From IMG/VR virus record IMGVR_UViG_3300020469_003050, positions 186,001 to 250,000 of that record: a stretch of 64,000 nt of DNA; one strand, given 5' to 3'. A program made the translations under genes and the position numbers. Positions 9,830 to 62,818 of this stretch are shown piece after piece. Numbering within the stretch: position 1 is the first letter of the stretch; every line of letters begins with the position of its first letter. Below the pieces are notes generated by a model. That model saw nothing but the letters and a program-made list of their open reading frames with translations. It did not search any database and was not told the DNA's origin.

Positions 9830-11554
9830 ATGGCAGAACAAATTAAATTTGGTGACAGATTATTTCTAAAAGGCGAAAAGCTAATATTAGATTCTGTTGC
9901 AAATGCAGTAATAAAACCTAATCAAGGTACACTAGAAATTGAAGGTAATTTACTAGTATCAGGTACAACTACCACAGTTAATTCAGAAACAGTAAGTATC
10001 GCTGATCCATTTATGTTATTAAATGGTGATTTGACATCATCAACTGCACCAACAGAACCTGTTGGTATTGAAATTAATAGAGGTTCTTCTGATAATAAGA
10101 AATTTGGATGGGACGAAACAAATTCTAAATTCTCAACATTTAGTGATGATTTAAAAACAGCCGCCATTGAAGCAACTGATATAGTTCTTACAGGTTCTTT
10201 AGTAGGTGATATTGCCTCAGAACTAGGTGATACAATAATTGATGTAACAGGCAACGGTACAGTAGATATCAACTCAGGTAATATTGACGGTACTGTTATT
10301 GGTGCAACTGCACCAGCACAAGCAACTTTTACTTCACTTACTTGGTCTACTACATCTAATACTACAGATGATTTAACTGAAGGTACAACAAATCAATATT
10401 ACACAGATGCAAGAGCAAGAGCGGCTATCAGTATGAATGCTGGTAGTGAATTGACTTATGATCCAGCAACTGGTATAATATCTTTTTCAGGAAATTATTA
10501 TCAAGATTCAGATGCTAGACAGGCAATCAGTGTAACAGGTAATGAAATAGGTTATGATAATACAACTGGTGTTATTAGTTATGATGCTCCTACAGACTTT
10601 GGTCTTTTAACAGATACAAATGTTATTTCAGGAAGCACAGGAGGCTCAACAGGTTCTAGTTTACCAACTAATGTTAGTTCTTTGTTTAATGATGCAGGGT
10701 ATGTTACACAGAGTTATCAAGGCTTCACCGCAGATTGGCAAGCAGATGATGTAACTAATTTAAATGCGGCAAAGGCTTACACTGACCAACAAATTAATTC
10801 GGTTGTTGACGTTGCTCCGTTACAATTAAACACATTAAAAAAATTAGCGGCGGCAGTAAATAACGATGCCAATTATAGTACATCAATACAAAATCAAATT
10901 AATGCTATGGCAATAGCCAATAATTTAGCAACTGTGGCTACATCAGGTAGCTTTAATGATTTACTAGACCAACCAACTATTCCTGTAAACGTAAGTGACT
11001 TACCAAATGATAGTGGTTACTTAACTTCTGGTGATTTACCAACTAATTATATGATTAATAATGGTAACAACACAGTAGCAGGAAGTATCACACCATTAAA
11101 TGATGCATCTTTCAGCTTGGGTACTCCAACAAAAAGATGGGAATATGTTTATGGTGAAACAGTTGAGGCAACATATGCCGACTTAGCAGAAAGATATGAA
11201 GCAGATGATATTTACGAACCAGGAACTGTTCTTATATTCGGTGGTGATAAAGAAGTTACTAAAACAGATGTACATACTGATTATAGAGTAGCAGGTGTTG
11301 TAAGTACTAATCCAGCTTATAAAATGAATTCAGATGCAGGTGCAGATGACACTCATCCTTACATTGCATTACGTGGTAGAGTTCCATGTAAAGTGGTGGG
11401 ACCAGTAGCTAAAGGCGACTTGATGGTAACATCTAGCGTCAAAGGACATGCAAAAAGTGTCGCTGGTGCTGATATGGGACGAGCAGTTTTTGCCAAATCC
11501 TTGACAAATGATGCTTCTGAAGGTTCAAAAATTATTGAAGTTGTAATACTTTAA
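9830..11554 (+). CDS. Fibre-like virion structural protein with C-terminal intramolecular-chaperone-like domain
   Basis: 574 aa, Thr/Ser/Gly-rich; TDDLTEG..NQYYTDAR unit; LNTLKKLAAAVNNDAN fibre motif; C-terminal YADLAERYEAD...ALRGRVPCKVVG..KGDLMV. Confidence 0.7.
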   Translation: MAEQIKFGDRLFLKGEKLILDSVANAVIKPNQGTLEIEGNLLVSGTTTTVNSETVSIADPFMLLNGDLTSSTAPTEPVGIEINRGSSDNKKFGWDETNSKFSTFSDDLKTAAIEATDIVLTGSLVGDIASELGDTIIDVTGNGTVDINSGNIDGTVIGATAPAQATFTSLTWSTTSNTTDDLTEGTTNQYYTDARARAAISMNAGSELTYDPATGIISFSGNYYQDSDARQAISVTGNEIGYDNTTGVISYDAPTDFGLLTDTNVISGSTGGSTGSSLPTNVSSLFNDAGYVTQSYQGFTADWQADDVTNLNAAKAYTDQQINSVVDVAPLQLNTLKKLAAAVNNDANYSTSIQNQINAMAIANNLATVATSGSFNDLLDQPTIPVNVSDLPNDSGYLTSGDLPTNYMINNGNNTVAGSITPLNDASFSLGTPTKRWEYVYGETVEATYADLAERYEADDIYEPGTVLIFGGDKEVTKTDVHTDYRVAGVVSTNPAYKMNSDAGADDTHPYIALRGRVPCKVVGPVAKGDLMVTSSVKGHAKSVAGADMGRAVFAKSLTNDASEGSKIIEVVIL

Positions 11555-22236: not shown

Positions 22237-23353
22237 TTCATCTAACACTGCTTGTTCATTATTATGGTCTCATGCTAGACTTAAAGTAGACGGTACCGTT
22301 CTGCCTTGTTGTTTCGTAGAAGAAAATAATATCCCAAATTTAAACGAAGCCCCAAAATTATCTGATGGATTGAATAACGCATTCAATTCTAAATTCTTTG
22401 ACGATATAAGAAGTGAAATGTTGAAAGGTAAAAAACTTTCAATGTGTGACAAGTGTTGGAATGCAGAAGATAATGGTATTGAATCATTCAGACAACAGTA
22501 TAAACAATACGATAAATTTATAGGGCAACAACCAAAGATAAGATATATTGAAACTGCTTTATCCACACATTGTAATTTATCATGTAGAATGTGTAATGAT
22601 ACATTTAGTAGTAAATGGAAACTTATAAAAAATCCTGGAATGTCAGTTGATGTTTCAGTTGATTCATTTGACTTAGAATATTACGACACTGATTTATCTA
22701 AATTAGATTTCGTTAAGTTTGTTGGTGGAGAACCGTTAATAGATAAAAAACATGCAAACTTTTTAAAACAAATTATAAGCAAATCAGATGATCCAAGTAA
22801 TGTAAAATTGTTCTACAATACTAACGGTACAATAATACCAAAACAAGAAATATTTGATGCATGGTCTAAACTAAAAGAAGTAGAAGTTACATTTAGTATC
22901 GATGCTATAGGCGAAGCAAATGAGATACTAAGACCCCCACACAAATGGGATACTATTCAAAGCGCCATAAATCACTTTACAGAGCATAAATCAGATAATA
23001 TGACGTTAGGTATGCATACTGTGATAAACGTCTTTAACATACACCTATTAAAGGATATAGTAGAGTTTTCATACGGTCACTTTGGGAAGATGCCTTATTT
23101 TGATATATTAGACTATCCAGAGCATATGTCATTAAAGAACTTAGAAAGTAGTTTAAAGATTAAACTATCTAATGTACTCAAACATGCATTTGAGGGACAA
23201 GAAGAATTACAATTTTTATTAGAATTTATAAATCAACCAACAAAGTATTCATATACCCTTGACCAAATTATAGACAAAGAAAAAGAAAATGATATTAAGG
23301 TAAATACATTGATAGAAAAATTAGGAACAAGAGAAATATGGAATTCTTTTTAA
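22229..23353 (+). CDS. Radical SAM enzyme with N-terminal SPASM/twitch-type cluster
   Basis: C..LW...DGTVLPCC...CDKC then CNLSCRMC (CxxxCxxC), GGEP, YNTNGT, FSIDA. Confidence 0.85.
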   Translation: MDNSSNTACSLLWSHARLKVDGTVLPCCFVEENNIPNLNEAPKLSDGLNNAFNSKFFDDIRSEMLKGKKLSMCDKCWNAEDNGIESFRQQYKQYDKFIGQQPKIRYIETALSTHCNLSCRMCNDTFSSKWKLIKNPGMSVDVSVDSFDLEYYDTDLSKLDFVKFVGGEPLIDKKHANFLKQIISKSDDPSNVKLFYNTNGTIIPKQEIFDAWSKLKEVEVTFSIDAIGEANEILRPPHKWDTIQSAINHFTEHKSDNMTLGMHTVINVFNIHLLKDIVEFSYGHFGKMPYFDILDYPEHMSLKNLESSLKIKLSNVLKHAFEGQEELQFLLEFINQPTKYSYTLDQIIDKEKENDIKVNTLIEKLGTREIWNSF

Positions 23354-55175: not shown

Positions 55176-55252
55176 GGACCCGTAGTTCAGCTGGATAGAA
55201 CGCCTGTCTACGAAACAGGAGGTCAGAGGTTCGAATCCTCTCGGGTCCGCCA
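55176..55252 (+). tRNA. tRNA-Arg (anticodon ACG), CCA encoded
   Basis: Acceptor GGACCCG/CGGGTCC, D arm GTTC/GAAC, anticodon arm CCTGT-CTACGAA-ACAGG, T arm AGAGG-TTCGAAT-CCTCT, G discriminator plus CCA. Confidence 0.95.
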
Positions 55253-56317: not shown

Positions 56318-56828
56318 AGAAAAATATATCTATGAAAGCCCAGATGGAGGAAAAACTGTGACTAGAAGAAAGTTTGGAGAAACTGAAAAAGAATTATTAG
56401 AAGAATATAACGAAATACAAACTTGGAAAAAAGAAGAAGACAACCACTTAACATTAGATATGGGTGATAGTTTAGATTTAGATGTTTCTAACTCAACTAC
56501 TATAACAACTACTATGCATGACACATTGTCTGTGGCAGGTGATTACACATATACAACATCGCCTTCTACTTTGACATTAGGTGGAAGTGGATATCAGTTT
56601 GAAGATGTAGAACCAGATTTACATGTGACAGTCAATGGCGAAGAAAGAAAAATGAGCGAAGTAATTGAACAAGTAGATAGCATTTCAAAAAGATTAAAAG
56701 TTTTAGAAAAGCCTGATGAAAAAACTTTAGAAAAATATAAAGTACTTGCAGATATATATGAACAATATAAAATTGCAGATGCATTTCTAAATTCTCCTGG
56801 ACCGGAGGACGATGATGAAAACCATTGA
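56307..56828 (+). CDS. Hypothetical protein
   Basis: Start at ATG 56307; IYESPDGGKTVTRR N-terminus, Thr-rich middle, helical C-terminus. Confidence 0.6.
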   Translation: MTSKEKYIYESPDGGKTVTRRKFGETEKELLEEYNEIQTWKKEEDNHLTLDMGDSLDLDVSNSTTITTTMHDTLSVAGDYTYTTSPSTLTLGGSGYQFEDVEPDLHVTVNGEERKMSEVIEQVDSISKRLKVLEKPDEKTLEKYKVLADIYEQYKIADAFLNSPGPEDDDENH

Positions 56829-57315
56829 TTATGATTGGATTAAAGTAGATAAAGCTATTCAACATATAGCAATGCAAATGTATCAAAGTGAATGGAGACC
56901 GGATTATATTGTTGGTATAACTAGAGGTGGATTAATACCAGCAGTTATGTTATCTCATATGACTAATATTCCAATGCATACACTTTCAATACAACTTGGT
57001 ACAGAAGGACTTGAAGAAAATACAGAAAGTAATTGTTGGATGGCAGAAGATGCCTTTGGTTACAAAGATAAACAAAAAAATATATTAGTTATTGATGATA
57101 TTAATCGTGGCGGTGATGCTCTTGCATGGCTTATGAATGATTGGAAAGAAGGTTGCTTACCCAATGATACATTAACTTGGGAAAGTGTTTGGCACAATAA
57201 TGTTAAGTTTGCTTCACTTATTATGGATCCAAATTCTATTGTTGATACTGATTACTACTATGAAGAATTATATTCAGAAGACGAAAATTGGGTAACATTT
57301 CCGTGGGAAAAATAG
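56812..57315 (+). CDS. Purine phosphoribosyltransferase (Gpt-like)
   Basis: IVGITRGGLIPA, ILVIDDINRGG PRPP loop, WVTFPWE. Confidence 0.88.
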   Translation: MMKTIDYDWIKVDKAIQHIAMQMYQSEWRPDYIVGITRGGLIPAVMLSHMTNIPMHTLSIQLGTEGLEENTESNCWMAEDAFGYKDKQKNILVIDDINRGGDALAWLMNDWKEGCLPNDTLTWESVWHNNVKFASLIMDPNSIVDTDYYYEELYSEDENWVTFPWEK

Positions 57316-58082
57316 ACGTATTACCACAAAAAACTTACTTGCTAGAATACTTTGCTGGAACATATGGAGACTATATATCAGGTCTTATATCATATTCAGT
57401 AAAAGGGTTTTATGATGATTATGAGTTAAAAGACCAATGGAGATATTGGTCTGTTGATTATGCTTTAGTAAAAAGAAATAGATATTCGCTAAGTTTAAGA
57501 GGTGGTGGATATGAGTTTGTAGAAAAGTATAATGAGTTTATGCTTTCACGTATGATAGAAGATTTTCGCCCTCACTTTGACGAAATGAAACCAACTAAAG
57601 TCTTATTCAATACACACCCAAGACTTGTACAGAACAGACAACCAAATAGCAAAGAACATTATAGAACACTTGTAAATGATTTTACTAAAACAAACACACT
57701 GTTTTTGGCAGTGCCTTTAGAGTTTGAATCTATATTCAAAGTTGCATGTAATGAGTATTATACAAGTAAGATGCATACAGAAAATAATATGGAAAATTTT
57801 TTAGAATTATTTAAACTACATGCAGACAAACAAGCACTTGCTCTAAAAATAATACCCGATGAAAAACGTTTCATGCTACATGATGTAGATGATATTTCAC
57901 CAAAAGATATAGTACAGTTTGGCGATGTTGATAGAGAACGTTTTCTTTATTACCAAGATATGTATAACATGGAAAAGATGGAGTTACTAAATTGGCATAC
58001 TCAACGTCTTTTAAAAAAGACAGAATATAGTAATCCAGAAATAATTAAAGAAATGAAAGACTATGTTAAATCGTTAATGTAG
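57288..58082 (+). CDS. Hypothetical protein (possibly degenerate P-loop/sulfotransferase-like)
   Basis: 264-aa ORF; YLLEYFAGTYGDYI N-terminal pattern; start uncertain (GTG 57303 possible). Confidence 0.5.
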   Translation: MGNISVGKIDVLPQKTYLLEYFAGTYGDYISGLISYSVKGFYDDYELKDQWRYWSVDYALVKRNRYSLSLRGGGYEFVEKYNEFMLSRMIEDFRPHFDEMKPTKVLFNTHPRLVQNRQPNSKEHYRTLVNDFTKTNTLFLAVPLEFESIFKVACNEYYTSKMHTENNMENFLELFKLHADKQALALKIIPDEKRFMLHDVDDISPKDIVQFGDVDRERFLYYQDMYNMEKMELLNWHTQRLLKKTEYSNPEIIKEMKDYVKSLM

Positions 58083-59083
58083 TTAGAAAGTAATTTTCTA
58101 TCTACGTAAGGTCTTATATTGTGTGTTTGAAAATCTGAAATCTTATAGTCTATTTCTTGTACATTTAAATTATCAAACTTAAACTGCTTAACATAATCAG
58201 CAAATCCAACATACTCAGTATCATACTTACCATATAGATAGTCTACTTTGATATTAGGATATGCATCTAAGTATCTGTATGGGTCTAATATCTTATTATC
58301 AATATTTAACTTTTTAAATCCCCAACATTTTACCATATGCATAATTGCAACATTAATCATATCTAGCTTTTGTTCTTCAAGGTGTGATGGTCTATTAAAC
58401 CATTTGAAATAAGATTTAATCCAAGGAGAATGTTCCCAAGAATATGTTGCTTGACCGGCTGTAGTTAATACGTTTGTTACTATATCACTTAGATGATATG
58501 CGACACTTAATGCACTACCGGCATGTTTAGAGTCTGCGTATATTATTACGTGCTTGTATTTTTTCTTAACATATTCTCTTATCTGATTACACATCTTTTC
58601 TTGTGTATCGTTCTTTTTACTTACACCTAATACCATTGCACTAGGATATAAAGACTCAGGATATCGTAATGGGTCTTCATTTACAATCAACAAGTCAGTA
58701 TCTAAGTTTACAATTTTCTCACTTACGTTTGTTAGTGGACTTGTCAATCTACCTTCATGTCCTGCATAACTTGTAAAGTGAATTATTAGTTTATCAAAAT
58801 CTTTGTCAGTTTTCTTCCAACACATAGTATAATCTTCACTGACATTTTCAAACTTATCAGTATCATATTGATATACCATGTCGGAATGAATATCCCAACT
58901 ACCTGTTCTTGCTTTTTGGGTGTAAGTATCTACTACATCTTTTTTATAAATCTTAGTGTAGATATCGCTACTTTTTATATTACGTAACTCTATATATTTT
59001 TCATATACTAGTTTTTCGTGTAAAAAGTATAAATCAAGTTCATCGTTTAGGTCTATATCTAAATCGAGTAGTTTAATTTTCAT
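58061..59083 (-). CDS. Alpha/beta-hydrolase-like protein (possible thioesterase or acyltransferase)
   Basis: LIIHFTSYAG strand, nucleophile-elbow-like VIIYADSKHAGSAL, C-terminal THN; elbow deviates from GxSxG. Confidence 0.45.
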   Translation of the reverse strand: MKIKLLDLDIDLNDELDLYFLHEKLVYEKYIELRNIKSSDIYTKIYKKDVVDTYTQKARTGSWDIHSDMVYQYDTDKFENVSEDYTMCWKKTDKDFDKLIIHFTSYAGHEGRLTSPLTNVSEKIVNLDTDLLIVNEDPLRYPESLYPSAMVLGVSKKNDTQEKMCNQIREYVKKKYKHVIIYADSKHAGSALSVAYHLSDIVTNVLTTAGQATYSWEHSPWIKSYFKWFNRPSHLEEQKLDMINVAIMHMVKCWGFKKLNIDNKILDPYRYLDAYPNIKVDYLYGKYDTEYVGFADYVKQFKFDNLNVQEIDYKISDFQTHNIRPYVDRKLLSNYINDLT

Positions 59084-59319
59084 TAATCATACTCCGCTAG
59101 ATACTCCACTAAATCTTTAACGTTTTTAATTTCGTCTAGTCTTTGGTTGTCTAATTCGATATCTAACTCGTCTTCTAGTGTAACTAGAATTTCAATACTA
59201 TCTAACGAATCAACGCCAATGTCTTTAAATGGTTGACCTGATTCGATAAACTCATCAGTTAGTTCAACCTCTGCCCTGTCAAGTGTAATTTCTTTTAGTG
59301 CCTTTAGTGTTCTGCTCAT
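59083..59319 (-). CDS. acpP: Acyl carrier protein
   Basis: 78 aa, acidic, FKDIGVDSLDSIEILVTLEDELDIEL with the phosphopantetheine-accepting DSL serine. Confidence 0.9.
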   Translation of the reverse strand: MSRTLKALKEITLDRAEVELTDEFIESGQPFKDIGVDSLDSIEILVTLEDELDIELDNQRLDEIKNVKDLVEYLAEYD

Positions 59320-59320
59320 T

Positions 59321-60259
59321 TTAATAGCCGCCTTCATTCTCTTTTGTGTGTTCGTAAAATGGTGCAAGTTTGAAGTCTTGTGTAATACGTCCTCTTCTTT
59401 TGCTACCTGGGTCTGGAATACCACCTTCATTGTCAGTATCCCAATTAGTAATTTTTACCCATCTTCCTCTATTTAGAAGTTTATTTCCTTCCTTCAGTGG
59501 GAATAAAATAGTGTTCTTTTCGCTAAACTTATTGTAGTAAGGTACACCGTGAAAGCTCCAAATATAGTCCTCAGAGACATTAAATTGGTCTGCACATAGT
59601 TTTACTAGCCCTTCTAATTTAATGTTACCGTCTTTGTCTTTCTGATATCTACCTAATTGTCCAACGTTTTTAATTCTCATCATTACGTTGTTTATCTTTT
59701 CTTTCTCTATAAGTTCTTTTAATCTTGCTGGTGCTTCATAATTAATCTCTGGAATAATAATAGTACCAGTATTCAAATTCATTTTTCTATCTACGATATT
59801 ACGAAGTGCTTTTAGTTTTTTAGTTGCACAACGTAGTTCATCGATTTGTTCATACCAATCATCGTTATCTACTCCATTCAAACTTAAAGTTACACTACGT
59901 AATCCTGCTTCAATTAAAGTATTTAAATATTTTGGACGTGATAATCTTAATCCATTTGTTACTAAAGTACAACTATGCTTTCTACCATTGGTACGTCCAT
60001 GCTCATATACTGCACGAATAAAATTTGCACAGTTAGGAGACATTGTAGGTTCTGCACCGATAATACGTACAAATGCTCGACCACCAAGCCTATCCATGAA
60101 ATCCTTAAATCTATCTAAGTCCATATCAGGTGGTTCTCTGCTAGGTATATAACAGTTCTTACAAGTCATGTTGCATTTATGCGTGATATCTGCACATATA
60201 TCTACAAACGTATTTTCTTCTGGTTCTGTAATCTCATAATTAAAGAGTTTATGAAGCAT
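59321..60259 (-). CDS. Radical SAM enzyme (MoaA/NifB/PqqE-like core)
   Basis: ITHKCNMTCKNCY, IGAEPT, LVTNGLRL, VTLSLNG; start set at ATG 60259. Confidence 0.85.
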   Translation of the reverse strand: MLHKLFNYEITEPEENTFVDICADITHKCNMTCKNCYIPSREPPDMDLDRFKDFMDRLGGRAFVRIIGAEPTMSPNCANFIRAVYEHGRTNGRKHSCTLVTNGLRLSRPKYLNTLIEAGLRSVTLSLNGVDNDDWYEQIDELRCATKKLKALRNIVDRKMNLNTGTIIIPEINYEAPARLKELIEKEKINNVMMRIKNVGQLGRYQKDKDGNIKLEGLVKLCADQFNVSEDYIWSFHGVPYYNKFSEKNTILFPLKEGNKLLNRGRWVKITNWDTDNEGGIPDPGSKRRGRITQDFKLAPFYEHTKENEGGY

Positions 60260-60274
60260 ATAGTTTTGTACCTT

Positions 60275-60304
60275 AATAAATATGTTTATGTACATCTATT
60301 TATC
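60275..60304. promoter_or_regulatory. Pair of opposite-strand late-type promoter elements between divergent operons
   Basis: AATAAATA on + (60275-60282) and GATAAATA on - (60297-60304). Confidence 0.55.
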
Positions 60305-60322
60305 GTCCCGGGAAATGCGCCA

Positions 60323-60931
60323 ATGTTAAAGCATTTATACAAATTCGATTATCGAATTGACAAGGACCAACTCAGAAAAGAACACAAGTTGATGCAAGAA
60401 AGTAATGATACTTCTTTGCATAATGTTAATACCGATTTATTAGAAAAAGTTAATGCAGGCAGAGAAACTGGTGAAGATATTTTCCCTACATATCATGATT
60501 TAAAAGATAAAGAGCAATGGGATAATATGGATACTTTGAAAATAAGAGCATTCAATGAATATCAATATCAAGATGATTGTCCAGAAATGAAAAGATTAAC
60601 TAATGATTTTGCTAAGATATTAGATAGTAAAGACATAACACCGTTCTTTGTATTACAAGAGCAAAACTCAGACTTTCCAATGCATATTGATATGGGGTTT
60701 CAATGTGCAATAAACTTAATTATAGATGGTGGAGATACACCAATTATGTTCAGAGAAGACGATGGATCTATACATAAATACAACTACGATAACGCATTAC
60801 TTAACATCTGTAACGTCTTTCACGGTGTACCTAAACAACAAGATATGAAAAGAATGTTACTTAAATTTAGAATAAAAGATGTATCGTATAATAATGCATG
60901 TAAGCGAATGATGGAGTACTTTAGTGAATAA
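60323..60931 (+). CDS. Fe(II)/2OG-type (cupin/DSBH) oxygenase-like protein 1
   Basis: PMHID...CAINLI...ALLNI..FHGV...RMLLKF (HxD...H...R). Confidence 0.65.
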   Translation: MLKHLYKFDYRIDKDQLRKEHKLMQESNDTSLHNVNTDLLEKVNAGRETGEDIFPTYHDLKDKEQWDNMDTLKIRAFNEYQYQDDCPEMKRLTNDFAKILDSKDITPFFVLQEQNSDFPMHIDMGFQCAINLIIDGGDTPIMFREDDGSIHKYNYDNALLNICNVFHGVPKQQDMKRMLLKFRIKDVSYNNACKRMMEYFSE

Positions 60932-61487
60932 TTCTATACATAATATAGATTTTGATATTGACAAAGATAAGCTAATAGAAGAAAGCAATCATTGTCAGTT
61001 TGTACCAATCAATCGTGTTACATTAAAACGTGTTCAGTTAGGTAGCTATGATGCAAAAGGTAGAAAGTTTTCTGATTATCTTAACAAGGAAGATAAAGAT
61101 TGGTGGATGCGACAAGATACTTGGCAATCAAGTATGAATGCTGATGCTGATATGTTAACTAAGATGCCAGAGACTACTAGAATACTTTCTATATTTAAAG
61201 AGAGATTAGACACTAATGATATTGAGGCTAACTTTTTTACGCAAAAAGTAGGCACTAATGTTAAGATGCATGTTGATGTTGGTACATCTTGTGCTATAAA
61301 CTTTATACTCAGAGGAGAAGAAACTCCGATAGTATTTGAAGAAGATGGTACATTTTATTATAAAGATGCATTAATAAATGTTAGTAAGAAACATATGGTA
61401 CCAGAACAAACATCTACAGATAGAATGCTTTTTAAATTAAGAATTTTAAATATGCCATTTGAAGAAGTAAGAGAAAAACTGATATGA
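60924..61487 (+). CDS. Fe(II)/2OG-type oxygenase-like protein 2 (paralogue)
   Basis: KMHVD...CAINFI...ALINV..KHMV...RMLFKL. Confidence 0.65.
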   Translation: MNNSIHNIDFDIDKDKLIEESNHCQFVPINRVTLKRVQLGSYDAKGRKFSDYLNKEDKDWWMRQDTWQSSMNADADMLTKMPETTRILSIFKERLDTNDIEANFFTQKVGTNVKMHVDVGTSCAINFILRGEETPIVFEEDGTFYYKDALINVSKKHMVPEQTSTDRMLFKLRILNMPFEEVREKLI

Positions 61488-62116
61488 ACAAAAGCCAAAT
61501 ATTTATATTATTACATCATGTATCGTTAGCAGTAGGCATTGCGATGTATGGGTTTCAATGGCCATGGGCTATCGTAGTATTTTTGTTTGGAATGTTTTGG
61601 GCTTGGGTAGTAGGACATAATATTATTCATTATTATTTTGCTCATGGCAAATACGAGGACAATCTTAAAAGTTATTTTTATACTTTACTGTCATTAACGT
61701 CTGGATTAGGATCACCAATATCATTCAGTGCTTCACACAGACAACATCATAGATTTACAGACACAGAAAAAGATCCACACTCGCCACATCATATAGGATG
61801 GAAACGTGTATACTTTTTAGATTGGGAACCACAAAATATCAATCCTAGACTTCTTGCTGATTTTGCCAGAAGTAAATTTCAAAAATGGGTTCACAAACAT
61901 TGGTATTATTTGCATATTGCAATCGTATTAGTGATTGCTCTTATAGATTTAAGATTGCTATTCTTTGCGTTATCTCCAGGAGTTCTGTATAGTTTTCACA
62001 GTGCCAGTTTGACAAATACATTGTCTCATATTGGCGGAGTGCATAGAAATGTACAGTTGCTAAAACCCCTTGCATGGTGGGGGTGGAACCATGCTGACCA
62101 TCACGATTATAAGTAA
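61484..62116 (+). CDS. Membrane fatty-acid desaturase (delta-9-like)
   Basis: Hydrophobic segments and three His boxes: HYYFAH, HRQHHRFTDTEKDPHSP, NHADHH. Confidence 0.88.
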   Translation: MNKSQIFILLHHVSLAVGIAMYGFQWPWAIVVFLFGMFWAWVVGHNIIHYYFAHGKYEDNLKSYFYTLLSLTSGLGSPISFSASHRQHHRFTDTEKDPHSPHHIGWKRVYFLDWEPQNINPRLLADFARSKFQKWVHKHWYYLHIAIVLVIALIDLRLLFFALSPGVLYSFHSASLTNTLSHIGGVHRNVQLLKPLAWWGWNHADHHDYK

Positions 62117-62431: not shown

Positions 62432-62460
62432 TTGACTATTAGTCTAAAATAATATATAAT
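62432..62460 (+). promoter_or_regulatory. sigma70 promoter
   Basis: TTGACT-17 nt-TATAAT. Confidence 0.7.
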
Positions 62461-62485: not shown

Positions 62486-62818
62486 ATGGCTAAAAATGGT
62501 GAACTAATTAATACGCCTGAACTAATGCGACATGCCAATGTCAAAAGTCGTTTAGATAGGCTTAGAGCATTGCAAGGCAAAGCAAAAGATTTAAGACAAT
62601 TTCATAGTGACTTTGAAAACTATGAGTTTTTAAAATGGACTTGCTTATCCCATGATGATATTAATTACGAAAAGTTATTGGTATCAGGTGCTGGATATGT
62701 AGTTCAATTAGTAGATTGGTGTAATAGTCATTGTGAAGATTATTATGTTGCTTATCAAGGGAAACTGTATTTTAAAAGTGAAACTGATGCCGCATACTTT
62801 ACAATGGTCTGGAAATAG
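62486..62818 (+). CDS. Hypothetical protein
   Basis: 110 aa, GGAG RBS, C-terminal DWCNSHC...LYFKSETDAAYFTMVW. Confidence 0.6.
   Translation: MAKNGELINTPELMRHANVKSRLDRLRALQGKAKDLRQFHSDFENYEFLKWTCLSHDDINYEKLLVSGAGYVVQLVDWCNSHCEDYYVAYQGKLYFKSETDAAYFTMVWK

What the first reader, a model, noticed from the sequence alone, without database searches (positions are those of the whole stretch)
58061..62116. Phage-encoded acyl-carrier-protein tailoring cluster: ACP, radical SAM, hydrolase-like protein, two oxygenases and a desaturase
Seen: two tightly coupled operons diverge from a short gap carrying late-type TAAATA elements on both strands. The minus arm is radical SAM (CxxxCxxC), ACP (GVDSL) and an alpha/beta-hydrolase-like ORF. 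The plus arm is two paralogous HxD...H...R oxygenase-like ORFs and a three-His-box desaturase. Established: ACPs carry acyl chains on a phosphopantetheinylated Ser; these enzyme classes act on ACP-bound or lipid substrates in biosynthetic clusters; hydrolase folds often off-load or transfer the chain. Inference: this is a compact pathway making a modified acyl moiety late in infection, for decorating virion proteins, remodelling host membrane lipids, or producing a small molecule. Single phage desaturases are known; I do not know a characterised phage pathway with this combination. No PPTase, ligase or ketosynthase is in the window, so host enzymes or genes elsewhere in the genome would be needed.
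Basis: partly seen in the sequence, partly recalled or inferred. Interest (0 to 1): 0.8.

Follow-up and report, generated by a model that had tools for sequence, protein, structure and literature searches.

The report
Mosaic phage acyl-chain oxidation cluster
A T4-like marine jumbo phage carries six genes under two back-to-back late-type promoters: a radical-SAM enzyme shaped like a lipid-tail-coupling enzyme, two iron oxygenases, a small membrane desaturase, its own acyl carrier protein and a serine hydrolase. The first three kinds recur together in many phages and bacteria, so they probably remodel fatty-acyl chains; the product is unknown, and the carrier protein and hydrolase are optional add-ons.

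Summary
All six ORFs, their motifs, the tight coupling and the divergent 63-bp gap with two ATAAATA elements are real. Corrected starts: rSAM 60259, first oxygenase 60323, ACP 59319 (78 aa).

Family calls are confirmed.
- A is an alpha/beta hydrolase with an invariant Ser-Asp-His triad.
- The rSAM model matches tetraether lipid synthase GDGT-MAS over 299 of 312 residues (Z 29.5, next MoaA 21.8) but lacks auxiliary-cluster cysteines.
- D and E are HxD...H...R cupins.
- F is a 210-aa SCD-type desaturase with all His ligands.

- The recurrent unit is cupin + rSAM, with or without a desaturase. It occurs in many viral lineages and as chromosomal operons in Bdellovibrionales and Alphaproteobacteria.
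- None of the 80 bacterial loci has an ACP.
- At this same locus, sibling phages show four states: the full set, no ACP, no ACP or cupins, and hydrolase alone.
- So ACP and hydrolase are accessories on a mosaic island.

The best reading is late-expressed oxidative remodelling of fatty-acyl or membrane-lipid chains, with an optional ACP/thioesterase feed. The substrate is inferred. No member of this rSAM family has been characterised.

The parts
58061..59083 (-). A: 340-aa alpha/beta-hydrolase-fold serine enzyme (putative thioesterase, acyltransferase or esterase). It has an extra about 70-aa N-terminal helical part. Last gene of the minus arm.
   Evidence: No Pfam, PHROG or NCBIfam hit. AF2 model pLDDT 88.7, pTM 0.90. 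375 PDB matches at E<=1e-3 in the Foldseek search; all 50 listed are alpha/beta-hydrolase-fold proteins. VIA Z 15-16 to esterase D / S-formylglutathione hydrolases and Ag85 mycolyltransferases over residues 71-340, in a flat ranking. Top Swiss-Prot match is LuxD acyl transferase. Invariant S185 (strand-DSKH-helix elbow), D288 and H321 in 21 homologues.
59083..59319 (-). B: 78-aa AcpP-like acyl carrier protein with GVDSLD (Ser for phosphopantetheine).
   Evidence: PF00550 at 4.8e-11, above cut-off. PHROG 5934, acyl carrier protein, at 1.3e-11. TIGR00517 AcpP model covered at positions 2-75 of 77 but below cut-off, 45 bits against 70. The start lies 1 nt after the rSAM stop.
59321..60259 (-). 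C: 312-aa radical SAM enzyme, a cut-down structural relative of tetraether lipid synthase (GDGT-MAS/Tes). It has only the SAM cluster.
   Evidence: PF04055 at 4e-16. Best curated models are TrsS, MoaA and Tes, all far below cut-off. Best PDB sequence hit is 7TOL at 1.9e-6. AF2 pLDDT 89.6. VIA Z 29.5, 299 of 312 residues at 2.8 A to 7TOL; next is MoaA at 21.8. Only C29, C33 and C36 are invariant cysteines in 33 homologues.
60260..60322 (.). 63-bp divergent control region with ATAAATA on the + strand (60276-60282) and the - strand (60297-60303), each about 40 nt upstream of a start codon.
   Evidence: Sequence read. Motif positions. 16 of 23 window copies are intergenic and sense-upstream of genes, including structural genes. 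The same motif stands upstream of A in sibling phages where A is alone.
60323..60931 (+). D: 202-aa cupin-type Fe(II)/2-oxoglutarate oxygenase-like protein (Asp/Asn-beta-hydroxylase-like).
   Evidence: No Pfam hit. H121-x-D123...H167...R177 is invariant across 12 phage homologues, including the cupins that flank the rSAM in distant phages. Atlas neighbours are viral clusters whose models resemble 2OG-Fe(II) oxygenases and Asp_Arg_Hydrox, TM 0.65-0.71. Bacterial members of the same HMM family pass the PF05118 cut-off.
60924..61487 (+). E: 187-aa paralogue of D. GTG start overlapping the end of D.
   Evidence: 32% identity to D, E 3e-29. Weak PF05118 hit at 0.027. Same invariant motif.
61484..62116 (+). 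F: 210-aa integral-membrane SCD/DesC-type (Delta9-family) di-iron desaturase or hydroxylase, unusually short.
   Evidence: PF00487 at 2.7e-6, 27.8 bits against a cut-off of 29.7. The only PDB sequence hits are stearoyl-CoA desaturases 4ZYO and 4YMK. H49/H54, H85/H88/H89, H99, H182 and H203/H206/H207 are invariant in 9 homologues. Hydrophobic segments at 6-48 and 140-169.

Best explanation
The six genes are a mosaic of three sub-modules at a hypervariable locus of a T4-like marine jumbo phage. They are probably transcribed late from two back-to-back promoters.

1. Core. Cupin Fe(II)/2OG oxygenases (D, E), an SCD-type membrane desaturase (F) and a Tes-like radical SAM enzyme (C). This is an evolutionarily conserved unit, also found as a chromosomal operon in bacteria. 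I propose that it oxidatively remodels long hydrophobic acyl chains: desaturation by F, hydroxylation by D and E, and radical H-abstraction chemistry on an unactivated chain carbon by C. The substrate would most likely be host membrane lipids or their acyl precursors.

2. ACP. An AcpP-like carrier that the host PPTase and FAS would load. It would give the phage a private acyl pool in the lineages that carry it.

3. Hydrolase A. A Ser-Asp-His alpha/beta hydrolase that off-loads or transfers acyl groups as a thioesterase or acyltransferase. It also has a role of its own, because siblings keep it alone.

Shown: gene structures, family and fold assignments, intact catalytic motifs, co-occurrence patterns and promoter-motif placement.

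Inferred: a lipid or acyl substrate, the order of reactions, ACP loading by the host, late timing, and the benefit to the phage.
For: Fold and family evidence points to acyl or lipid chemistry for every part.
- C matches GDGT-MAS far above any other rSAM and over its whole length. At sequence level it hits the Tes/TrsS clade.
- F aligns only to stearoyl-CoA desaturases in the PDB, and all metal ligands are conserved.
- B is AcpP-like.
- A falls among thioesterases and lipid acyltransferases.

Linkage evidence:
- The five family HMMs hit only at 58-62 kb in the 64-kb window.
- A cupin lies within 4 kb of the rSAM in 24 of 35 viral lineages. Another 9 have an adjacent unclassified 197-aa family.
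- A desaturase lies within 4 kb in 10 of 35 lineages.
- The order cupin-desaturase-rSAM is an operon in about 8 Bdellovibrionales genomes, and cupin-rSAM in Alphaproteobacteria.
- A distant bacterial clade couples the rSAM to a heme-oxygenase-like di-iron enzyme, a DltB-like MBOAT and two alpha/beta hydrolases.
- ACP sits next to the rSAM or the desaturase in at least four separate places on the rSAM tree, and in further lineages L172, L179, L183 and L196.

Late-type motifs are placed upstream of both arms. Identical fragments of all arms occur in marine metatranscriptome assemblies.
Against: - No member of this rSAM family, and no cupin-desaturase-rSAM operon, has a known product. A shared fold does not fix the substrate.
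- C lacks the auxiliary clusters that GDGT-MAS uses, so its chemistry must differ.
- Asp_Arg_Hydrox cupins also hydroxylate proteins.
- Neighbourhoods of distant homologues contain carbamoyltransferase, DegT and class-IV aminotransferases, AMP-binding enzymes, TauD, methyltransferase and tail-fibre genes. These fit sugar, amino-acid or virion-protein chemistry as well.
- Close relatives differ by presence or absence of ACP, the cupins or everything but A. Joint action of all six is therefore not required.
- The metatranscriptome signal may be carried-over DNA.
Confidence: 0.45

Rival explanations
1. Hypervariable-island mosaic. The genes are independently acting auxiliary genes that accumulate at a plastic locus of T4-like marine phages. 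Adjacency reflects cassette insertion, not a shared pathway.
For: There are four gene-content states at the same locus in sibling phages: full set, minus ACP, minus ACP and cupins, and A alone. A has its own promoter-like motif when alone. Published pelagimyophage comparisons describe radical-SAM cassettes that come and go in a hypervariable region (PMC7029224). Short desaturases and cupins are common in viral contigs without the rSAM: 69 of 80 desaturase loci lack it.
Against: The cupin-(desaturase)-rSAM order recurs as tight operons in bacterial chromosomes and in viral lineages whose rSAM is only 33-48% identical. None of the five families occurs elsewhere in the window. Overlapping stop and start codons indicate co-translation within each arm.
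Confidence: 0.2
2. Protein or peptide modification. The cupins are Asp/Asn beta-hydroxylases and the rSAM is a peptide- or protein-modifying enzyme. They would act on a virion or tail-fibre protein or a small peptide, with ACP plus hydrolase adding an acyl group (lipidation).
For: Late-type promoters are shared with structural genes. The PF05118 family includes protein hydroxylases. In Pelagibacter phage Mosig the cupin-desaturase arm ends at a tail-fibre gene. In L058 the rSAM follows tail-fibre genes and a 41-aa ORF. An Mtd_N tropism-determinant protein lies within 4 kb in 7 of 35 lineages. One distant homologue sits with HlyC acyltransferase, a JmjC-type cupin and a C39 peptidase.
Against: An integral-membrane SCD-type desaturase has no known protein substrate. 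The rSAM lacks the SPASM/twitch cysteines typical of peptide maturases; no RRE domain was looked for. Its best structural match is a lipid enzyme. No precursor-peptide ORF lies in the window cluster. The bacterial operons are not next to obvious peptide genes.
Confidence: 0.15
3. Carrier-protein-tethered small-molecule (amino-acid or sugar-derived) biosynthesis. The ACP carries an aminoacyl or short acyl unit, oxygenases tailor it, and the hydrolase releases it, as in NRPS-type beta-hydroxylation, butirosin side-chain or isonitrile-lipopeptide logic.
For: TauD-family oxygenases sit beside the rSAM and ACP in L026, L056 and L059. AMP-binding enzymes occur in L019 and L053, and an ATP-grasp enzyme in L179. 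Aminotransferases, carbamoyltransferase and methyltransferase are nearby. One TauD neighbour weakly resembles ScoE.
Against: The window has no ligase, adenylation enzyme or PPTase. The ACP has the FAS-type DSLD motif and best matches AcpP models. Most rSAM lineages and all bacterial loci lack any carrier protein. The desaturase is a membrane enzyme of the fatty-acyl class.
Confidence: 0.15

Closest known systems
GDGT-MAS / Tes tetraether lipid synthase (PDB 7TOL; PMC9433317) and bacterial membrane-spanning-lipid synthase homologues (PMC13159169)
   Same: Radical SAM enzyme. The whole phage protein superposes on residues 69-481 of 7TOL (Z 29.5, 2.8 A). It is the best PDB sequence hit, and Tes/TrsS are the best curated models. 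These enzymes abstract H from unactivated lipid-tail carbons.
   Different: 312 aa against about 500. 17% identity. Scores far below the Tes family cut-off (36.9 bits against 450). No conserved cysteines for auxiliary clusters. Partnered with oxygenases and a desaturase, not with archaeal lipid genes. Substrate untested.
Cyanophage Delta9 lipid desaturases (vFAD; Roitman et al. 2017, PMC5776448)
   Same: Phage-encoded membrane His-box desaturases of the SCD/DesC class in marine T4-like phages. They were shown there to desaturate C16 chains.
   Different: F is only 210 aa and scores below the Pfam cut-off. It gave no cyanophage hit by tblastn at E<=1e-3; the single hit in 50,697 phage records is Pelagibacter phage Mosig at 26% identity. 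F is operonic with cupins and an rSAM, which that paper's text does not mention. Activity is untested.
Hypervariable cluster of Pelagibacter phage Mosig EXVC030M (MT647606) and radical-SAM cassettes of pelagimyophages (PMC7029224)
   Same: Divergent arrangement. One arm is Asp_Arg_Hydrox-FA_desaturase-...-TauD-GNAT-Asp_Arg_Hydrox. The other holds MoaA-like radical SAM genes. The cupin and desaturase families are the same as here. The gene content is variable.
   Different: Mosig's rSAMs are not of this family; they show only generic similarity at 2e-9. Mosig has no ACP and no A-type hydrolase. Function is uncharacterised there too.
LpxO / OlsC lipid hydroxylases of the Asp_Arg_Hydrox family (own knowledge, not tested here)
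   Same: Cupin Fe(II)/2OG enzymes with HxD...H that hydroxylate acyl chains of lipid A or ornithine lipids. They are often found in organisms that also use His-box lipid hydroxylases.
   Different: D and E give no significant sequence match to any named member. The family also contains protein hydroxylases, so the lipid analogy is only a lead.
LuxD myristoyl-ACP acyl transferase; esterase D / Ag85 subfamily of alpha/beta hydrolases
   Same: Same fold, with the Ser-Asp-His triad in canonical order. These enzymes cleave thioesters or transfer lipid acyl groups.
   Different: TM only about 0.4, 8-15% identity and a flat hit list, so no subfamily assignment is possible. A has an extra N-terminal helical part. 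It occurs alone in sibling phages.

Membership tests
Acyl carrier protein (PF00550, AcpP-like) | PP-binding profile above the curated cut-off | tested here: met
   43.2 bits against 20.8. The AcpP equivalog TIGR00517 is covered end to end but scores 45 bits against 70, below its cut-off.
Acyl carrier protein (PF00550, AcpP-like) | Conserved D-S-L serine for 4'-phosphopantetheine; about 80 aa | tested here: met
   GVDSLD in a 78-aa ORF.
Acyl carrier protein (PF00550, AcpP-like) | Actually phosphopantetheinylated and acylated | not testable with these tools
   Needs mass spectrometry. No PPTase was found in the window.
Radical SAM superfamily | CxxxCxxC cluster motif, invariant in homologues; Pfam above cut-off; partial TIM-barrel fold | tested here: met
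   C29, C33 and C36 invariant. 60.1 bits against 29.5. The model matches rSAM structures.
Tes / GDGT-MAS tetraether lipid synthase family | Full-length structural correspondence | tested here: met
   Z 29.5, 299 of 312 residues; next-best family 21.8.
Tes / GDGT-MAS tetraether lipid synthase family | Score above the curated family cut-off (NF045702) | tested here: not met
   36.9 bits against 450. Bacterial relatives score 65-76 bits.
Tes / GDGT-MAS tetraether lipid synthase family | Additional Fe-S cluster cysteines | tested here: not met
   No conserved cysteine beyond the SAM cluster in 33 sequences.
SCD/DesC-type membrane fatty-acid desaturase (PF00487) | Histidine boxes HxxxxH, HxxHH, HxxHH plus NxxxH | tested here: met
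   All invariant in 9 homologues. They align to SCD1 boxes.
SCD/DesC-type membrane fatty-acid desaturase (PF00487) | Pfam gathering score; usual length of about 270-360 aa | tested here: not met
   27.8 bits against 29.7. 210 aa.
SCD/DesC-type membrane fatty-acid desaturase (PF00487) | Four transmembrane helices in two hairpins | tested here: inconclusive
   Hydropathy shows two long hydrophobic stretches, 6-48 and 140-169, each long enough for a hairpin. No topology predictor was run.
Fe(II)/2-oxoglutarate oxygenase, Asp_Arg_Hydrox cupin (PF05118) | HxD/E...H facial triad and a basic residue for 2OG | tested here: met
   H121, D123, H167 and R177 invariant in 12 sequences.
Fe(II)/2-oxoglutarate oxygenase, Asp_Arg_Hydrox cupin (PF05118) | Pfam gathering score | tested here: not met
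   D has no hit. E scores 14.7 bits against 22.6. A bacterial member of the same HMM family passes with 32.8 bits.
Fe(II)/2-oxoglutarate oxygenase, Asp_Arg_Hydrox cupin (PF05118) | Double-stranded beta-helix fold | tested here: inconclusive
   Only the Atlas model of a neighbouring cluster was compared, TM 0.65-0.71 to 2OG oxygenases.
Alpha/beta hydrolase superfamily | Fold, with nucleophile elbow Ser, then acid, then His in canonical order | tested here: met
   S185 lies between a strand and a helix. D288 and H321 follow later strands. All three are invariant.
Acyl-ACP thioesterase / LuxD-type acyl transferase | Specific similarity above other hydrolase subfamilies | tested here: inconclusive
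   LuxD is the top Swiss-Prot hit, but TM is 0.39-0.42 and E-values are similar for many subfamilies. The VIA ranking is flat at Z 14-16.
Self-contained type II FAS/PKS-like ACP pathway | Ketosynthase, acyl-ACP ligase or acyltransferase, and PPTase encoded alongside | tested here: not met
   None at E<=1e-4 among 47 other window ORFs, with 25 of 27 families listed. None in the flanks of close relatives.
T4-type late promoter | TATAAATA-like core placed upstream of late (structural) genes | tested here: inconclusive
   ATAAATA (7 of 8) stands upstream of both arms and of sheath and structural genes. 16 of 23 copies are intergenic. There is no transcript-start data, and gp55/gp33 homologues were not sought.

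The most novel reading that the evidence does not exclude
Cupin oxygenase + short SCD-type desaturase + auxiliary-cluster-free 'mini-Tes' radical SAM enzyme is a conserved, uncharacterised three-enzyme system. It is shared by Bdellovibrionales, marine Alphaproteobacteria and many marine T4-like phages. It would make a new kind of modified membrane lipid, for example an in-chain functionalised, cyclised or cross-linked acyl chain. Some phages would add their own ACP and a thioesterase or acyltransferase to divert host fatty-acid synthesis into it late in infection.
Probability: 0.3. Interest if true: 0.8.

Novelty: new variant of a known kind. Interest (0 to 1): 0.6.

Why it matters
If the core really acts on lipids, three things follow.

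1. Abundant ocean phages would carry multi-step lipid-tailoring chemistry. This phage's DNA is in at least 14 sequencing runs from at least 9 studies. That chemistry would go well beyond the single Delta9 desaturases already known.

2. A radical SAM family related to tetraether synthase would be active on bacterial lipids without auxiliary clusters. That is of interest both for enzymology and for interpreting lipid biomarkers.

3. The bacterial operons in cultivable Roseibium/Labrenzia strains make the question directly testable. Bdellovibrionales, so far represented only by MAGs in this set, carry the same operon.

If instead it is a mosaic of unrelated auxiliary genes, it is an ordinary hypervariable island.

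Tried and rejected
- DNA similarity of the region to 50,697 phage genomes: no match.
- tblastn of the rSAM (E<=1e-10), A and D (E<=1e-3) against the same set: no match. No cultured phage carries these genes.
- Pfam, PHROG and NCBIfam gave nothing for A and D. Structure and motif analysis was needed.
- The profile of the cupins against PDB sequences gave only marginal hits.
- The 358-aa gene that follows ACP in L018 and L023 might be a Cys-nucleophile version of A. hhalign probability was only 12.8%, so this is left open.
- The nine-sequence desaturase alignment was too divergent for a locus scan. It was redone with five sequences.
- One Pfam call failed on a mis-framed reference.
- Metatranscriptome contigs cover parts of every gene with 0 mismatches. 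They are unstranded and patchy and could be DNA carry-over; one library is oligo-dT. They are not taken as proof of transcription.
- A DNA-hypermodification role was considered because of nearby thymidylate-synthase-like genes in L059 and L060. It was rejected as the main reading because a membrane desaturase and an ACP do not fit, and TS and DHFR are common T4-like genes.
- Literature searches found no characterised phage ACP + rSAM + desaturase pathway. They found only notes of ACP modules in jumbophages.

Full report
**What is there**

The window is part of a 342.6-kb IMG/VR contig. It comes from a T4-like myovirus. The evidence is Gp23 major capsid, T4 baseplate, gp15, gp32 and prohead protease, plus portal, tail sheath, large terminase, class I RNR and helicase. 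It has no close relative among 50,697 deposited phage genomes.

At 58061-62116 two arms diverge from a 63-bp gap.
- The minus arm is rSAM (59321-60259), ACP (59083-59319) and hydrolase A (58061-59083). One base separates the rSAM stop from the ACP start, and the ACP stop overlaps the start of A (TAATG).
- The plus arm is D (60323-60931), E (60924-61487) and F (61484-62116), with 8-nt and 4-nt overlaps.
Homologue alignments fix the shorter starts.

**Promoter claim**

ATAAATA occurs once on each strand in the gap, about 40 nt from each start codon. The word is not enriched overall: 23 found against 33 expected. With the corrected starts, however, 16 of 23 copies are in the 8% of the window that is non-coding. 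They lie sense-upstream of genes that include the sheath and other structural genes. That is how a late-promoter core behaves. Timing itself is inferred.

**Identity of each gene**

- ACP: PF00550 above cut-off, GVDSLD, 78 aa. Its best curated models are AcpP.
- rSAM: PF04055 above cut-off. No curated family claims it; TrsS, MoaA and Tes are the best but lie far below their cut-offs.
  - The AF2 model (pLDDT 89.6) aligns to tetraether lipid synthase GDGT-MAS over 299 of 312 residues at 2.8 A, Z 29.5. MoaA is next at 21.8 and everything else is at or below 19.
  - 7TOL is also the best PDB sequence hit.
  - Only the three SAM-cluster cysteines are conserved. It is a stripped-down relative without auxiliary clusters.
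- A has no profile hit. Its model (pLDDT 88.7) is an alpha/beta hydrolase.
  - S185 at a strand-turn-helix elbow, D288 and H321 are invariant in 21 homologues.
  - The nearest subfamilies are esterase D / S-formylglutathione thioesterases, Ag85 mycolyltransferases and LuxD. They cannot be separated.
- D and E are paralogues. They share an invariant HxD...H...R with the about 200-aa cupins that flank the rSAM in distant phages. Related bacterial members pass the Asp_Arg_Hydrox cut-off.
- F aligns only to stearoyl-CoA desaturases in the PDB. It keeps every histidine ligand and has two long hydrophobic stretches. It is only 210 aa and falls just under the Pfam cut-off.

**Is it a unit?**

HMMs built for the five families hit nowhere else in the window, so adjacency is not a background effect.

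Across 35 viral rSAM lineages (clusters at 80% identity):
- a cupin lies within 4 kb in 24, and a further 9 have an adjacent unclassified 197-aa family;
- a desaturase lies within 4 kb in 10;
- an ACP in 6, plus the window's own lineage, which my ORF filter missed;
- an A-type hydrolase in 2.

Starting instead from 80 viral loci with F-like desaturases, 38 have cupins, 11 the rSAM and 9 an ACP. Desaturases often stand in tandem arrays of up to six.

The rSAM family also occurs in bacterial genomes at 32-44% identity.
- In Bdellovibrionales the order cupin-desaturase-rSAM is an operon.
- In Alphaproteobacteria (Roseibium, Labrenzia and others) it is GNAT-cupin-rSAM.
- In a distant clade it is two alpha/beta hydrolases, then rSAM, a heme-oxygenase-like di-iron enzyme and a DltB-like MBOAT.
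- No ACP was found in any of the 80 bacterial loci.
- Viral and bacterial sequences interleave on the rSAM tree, with at least 5-7 switches. ACP-bearing lineages sit in at least four places.
- One 'bacterial' MAG contig is identical to a viral one, so some MAG hits may be binned phage. Several other hits lie on multi-megabase chromosomes.

**Mosaicism**

Sibling phages show four states at exactly this locus, with flanking genes up to 91-94% identical:
- F-E-D | rSAM-ACP-A (the window, L004-L006);
- F-E-D | rSAM-A (L007-L009);
- F | rSAM-A (L010-L012);
- A alone, with its own ATAAATA element (L042-L045, L048, L050).

A keeps its triad in all of them. The ACP and A are therefore dispensable or separable. 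The oxygenase/desaturase/rSAM association is the ancient one.

**Mechanism**

Every part has its nearest characterised relatives in acyl or lipid chemistry. The conserved core consists of enzymes that act on unactivated hydrocarbon positions.

My best reading (0.45) is late-expressed oxidative remodelling of fatty-acyl or membrane-lipid chains by F, D/E and C. The AcpP-like ACP and hydrolase A would be an optional feed or off-loading module that exploits the host FAS and PPTase.

The ACP-less relatives and the bacterial operons argue that the core acts on lipid-bound or host-ACP-bound chains. They argue against an obligately phage-ACP-tethered intermediate.

Rivals:
- independent auxiliary genes on a plastic island (0.2);
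- virion-protein or peptide modification (0.15), supported by tail-fibre proximity in Mosig and L058 and by an HlyC/JmjC/C39 context of one distant homologue;
- carrier-tethered small-molecule synthesis (0.15), suggested by TauD, AMP-binding, ATP-grasp, aminotransferase and carbamoyltransferase neighbours.

**Comparison with the literature**

- Single cyanophage Delta9 desaturases are characterised (PMC5776448).
- Radical-SAM cassettes and Asp/Asn hydroxylases have been noted, not explained, in pelagimyophage hypervariable regions (PMC7029224).
- The cultured Pelagibacter phage Mosig has a similar divergent cluster with the same cupin and desaturase families but different rSAMs and no ACP.
- ACP modules in jumbophages have been remarked on.
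- I found no characterised pathway of this composition.

**Other evidence**

The phage region is held almost completely in at least 14 DNA runs from at least 9 studies. Short contigs identical to parts of all genes occur in four RNA-type libraries. They are unstranded and may be DNA.

**Verdict**

This is a new variant of a known kind, a phage auxiliary lipid-type gene set. The Tes-like rSAM/cupin/desaturase core shared with bacteria is the part worth follow-up. Interest 0.6.

Noticed in passing
window 55176-55252 (+): tRNA-Arg (anticodon ACG). It overlaps spurious ORFs on both strands that the ORF list reports.
   Followed up: partly
window 22418-23353 (+): A second, unrelated radical SAM gene (CNLSCRMC) sits among structural genes just upstream of the tail sheath. 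The same Pfam sweep also found PhyH dioxygenase, an Fe-S assembly protein (FeS_assembly_P), PTPS/QueD-like, NUDIX, methyltransferase and TnsA-like endonuclease families somewhere in the window.
   Followed up: partly
window-wide, e.g. 9781, 11592, 24320, 32645, 35314, 38712 (+), 18749 (-): ATAAATA is depleted overall but concentrated in intergenic DNA 22-92 nt upstream of genes, mostly structural ones. It is a candidate late-promoter core for this phage.
   Followed up: yes
L042-L045, L048, L050 (A at about 10001-11032): Sibling phages with the same flanking genes carry only the hydrolase A at this locus. It is preceded by a GATAAATA element and short direct repeats (TATATACGATTATATACGATT).
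   Followed up: partly
L190, L204, L155/L157, L171/L175/L181: Viral contigs with tandem arrays of four to six short SCD-type desaturase paralogues, often with several cupins. This suggests multi-step chain oxidation.
   Followed up: no
L058 5876-6001; L053 5692-5811: 39-41-aa ORFs lie immediately upstream of distant rSAM homologues. In L058 the ORF comes directly after tail-fibre genes. They are possible precursor peptides and are unexamined.
   Followed up: no
context of P0187 (no DNA held): A 36%-identical rSAM homologue is flanked by an HlyC-type acyl-ACP protein acyltransferase, a 508-aa Cupin_8 (JmjC-like) protein, a C39 peptidase protein and another rSAM.
   Followed up: no
L285 4180-10473: In a Beijerinckiaceae MAG the order is two alpha/beta hydrolases, a 71-aa ORF, the rSAM, a heme-oxygenase-like di-iron enzyme, a DltB-like MBOAT and a 345-aa unknown, all on one strand.
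   Followed up: partly
L215 versus L124: The rSAM of a 'Balneola sp.' MAG contig (PCAT01000113.1) is identical to that of an IMG/VR viral contig. The MAG contig is probably binned phage DNA.
   Followed up: no
window 56812-57315 (+) and 57288-58082 (+): A phosphoribosyltransferase-domain gene (PF00156 at 4e-7; PHROG 8995) lies upstream of the cluster. Next to it is a fast-evolving 264-aa unknown that converges on A, at 51-57% identity where neighbours are about 90%.
   Followed up: no
window 62432-62460 (+): An 11-of-12 match to a sigma-70-type promoter lies just upstream of the ORF at 62486. It marks the downstream boundary of the plus arm.
   Followed up: no
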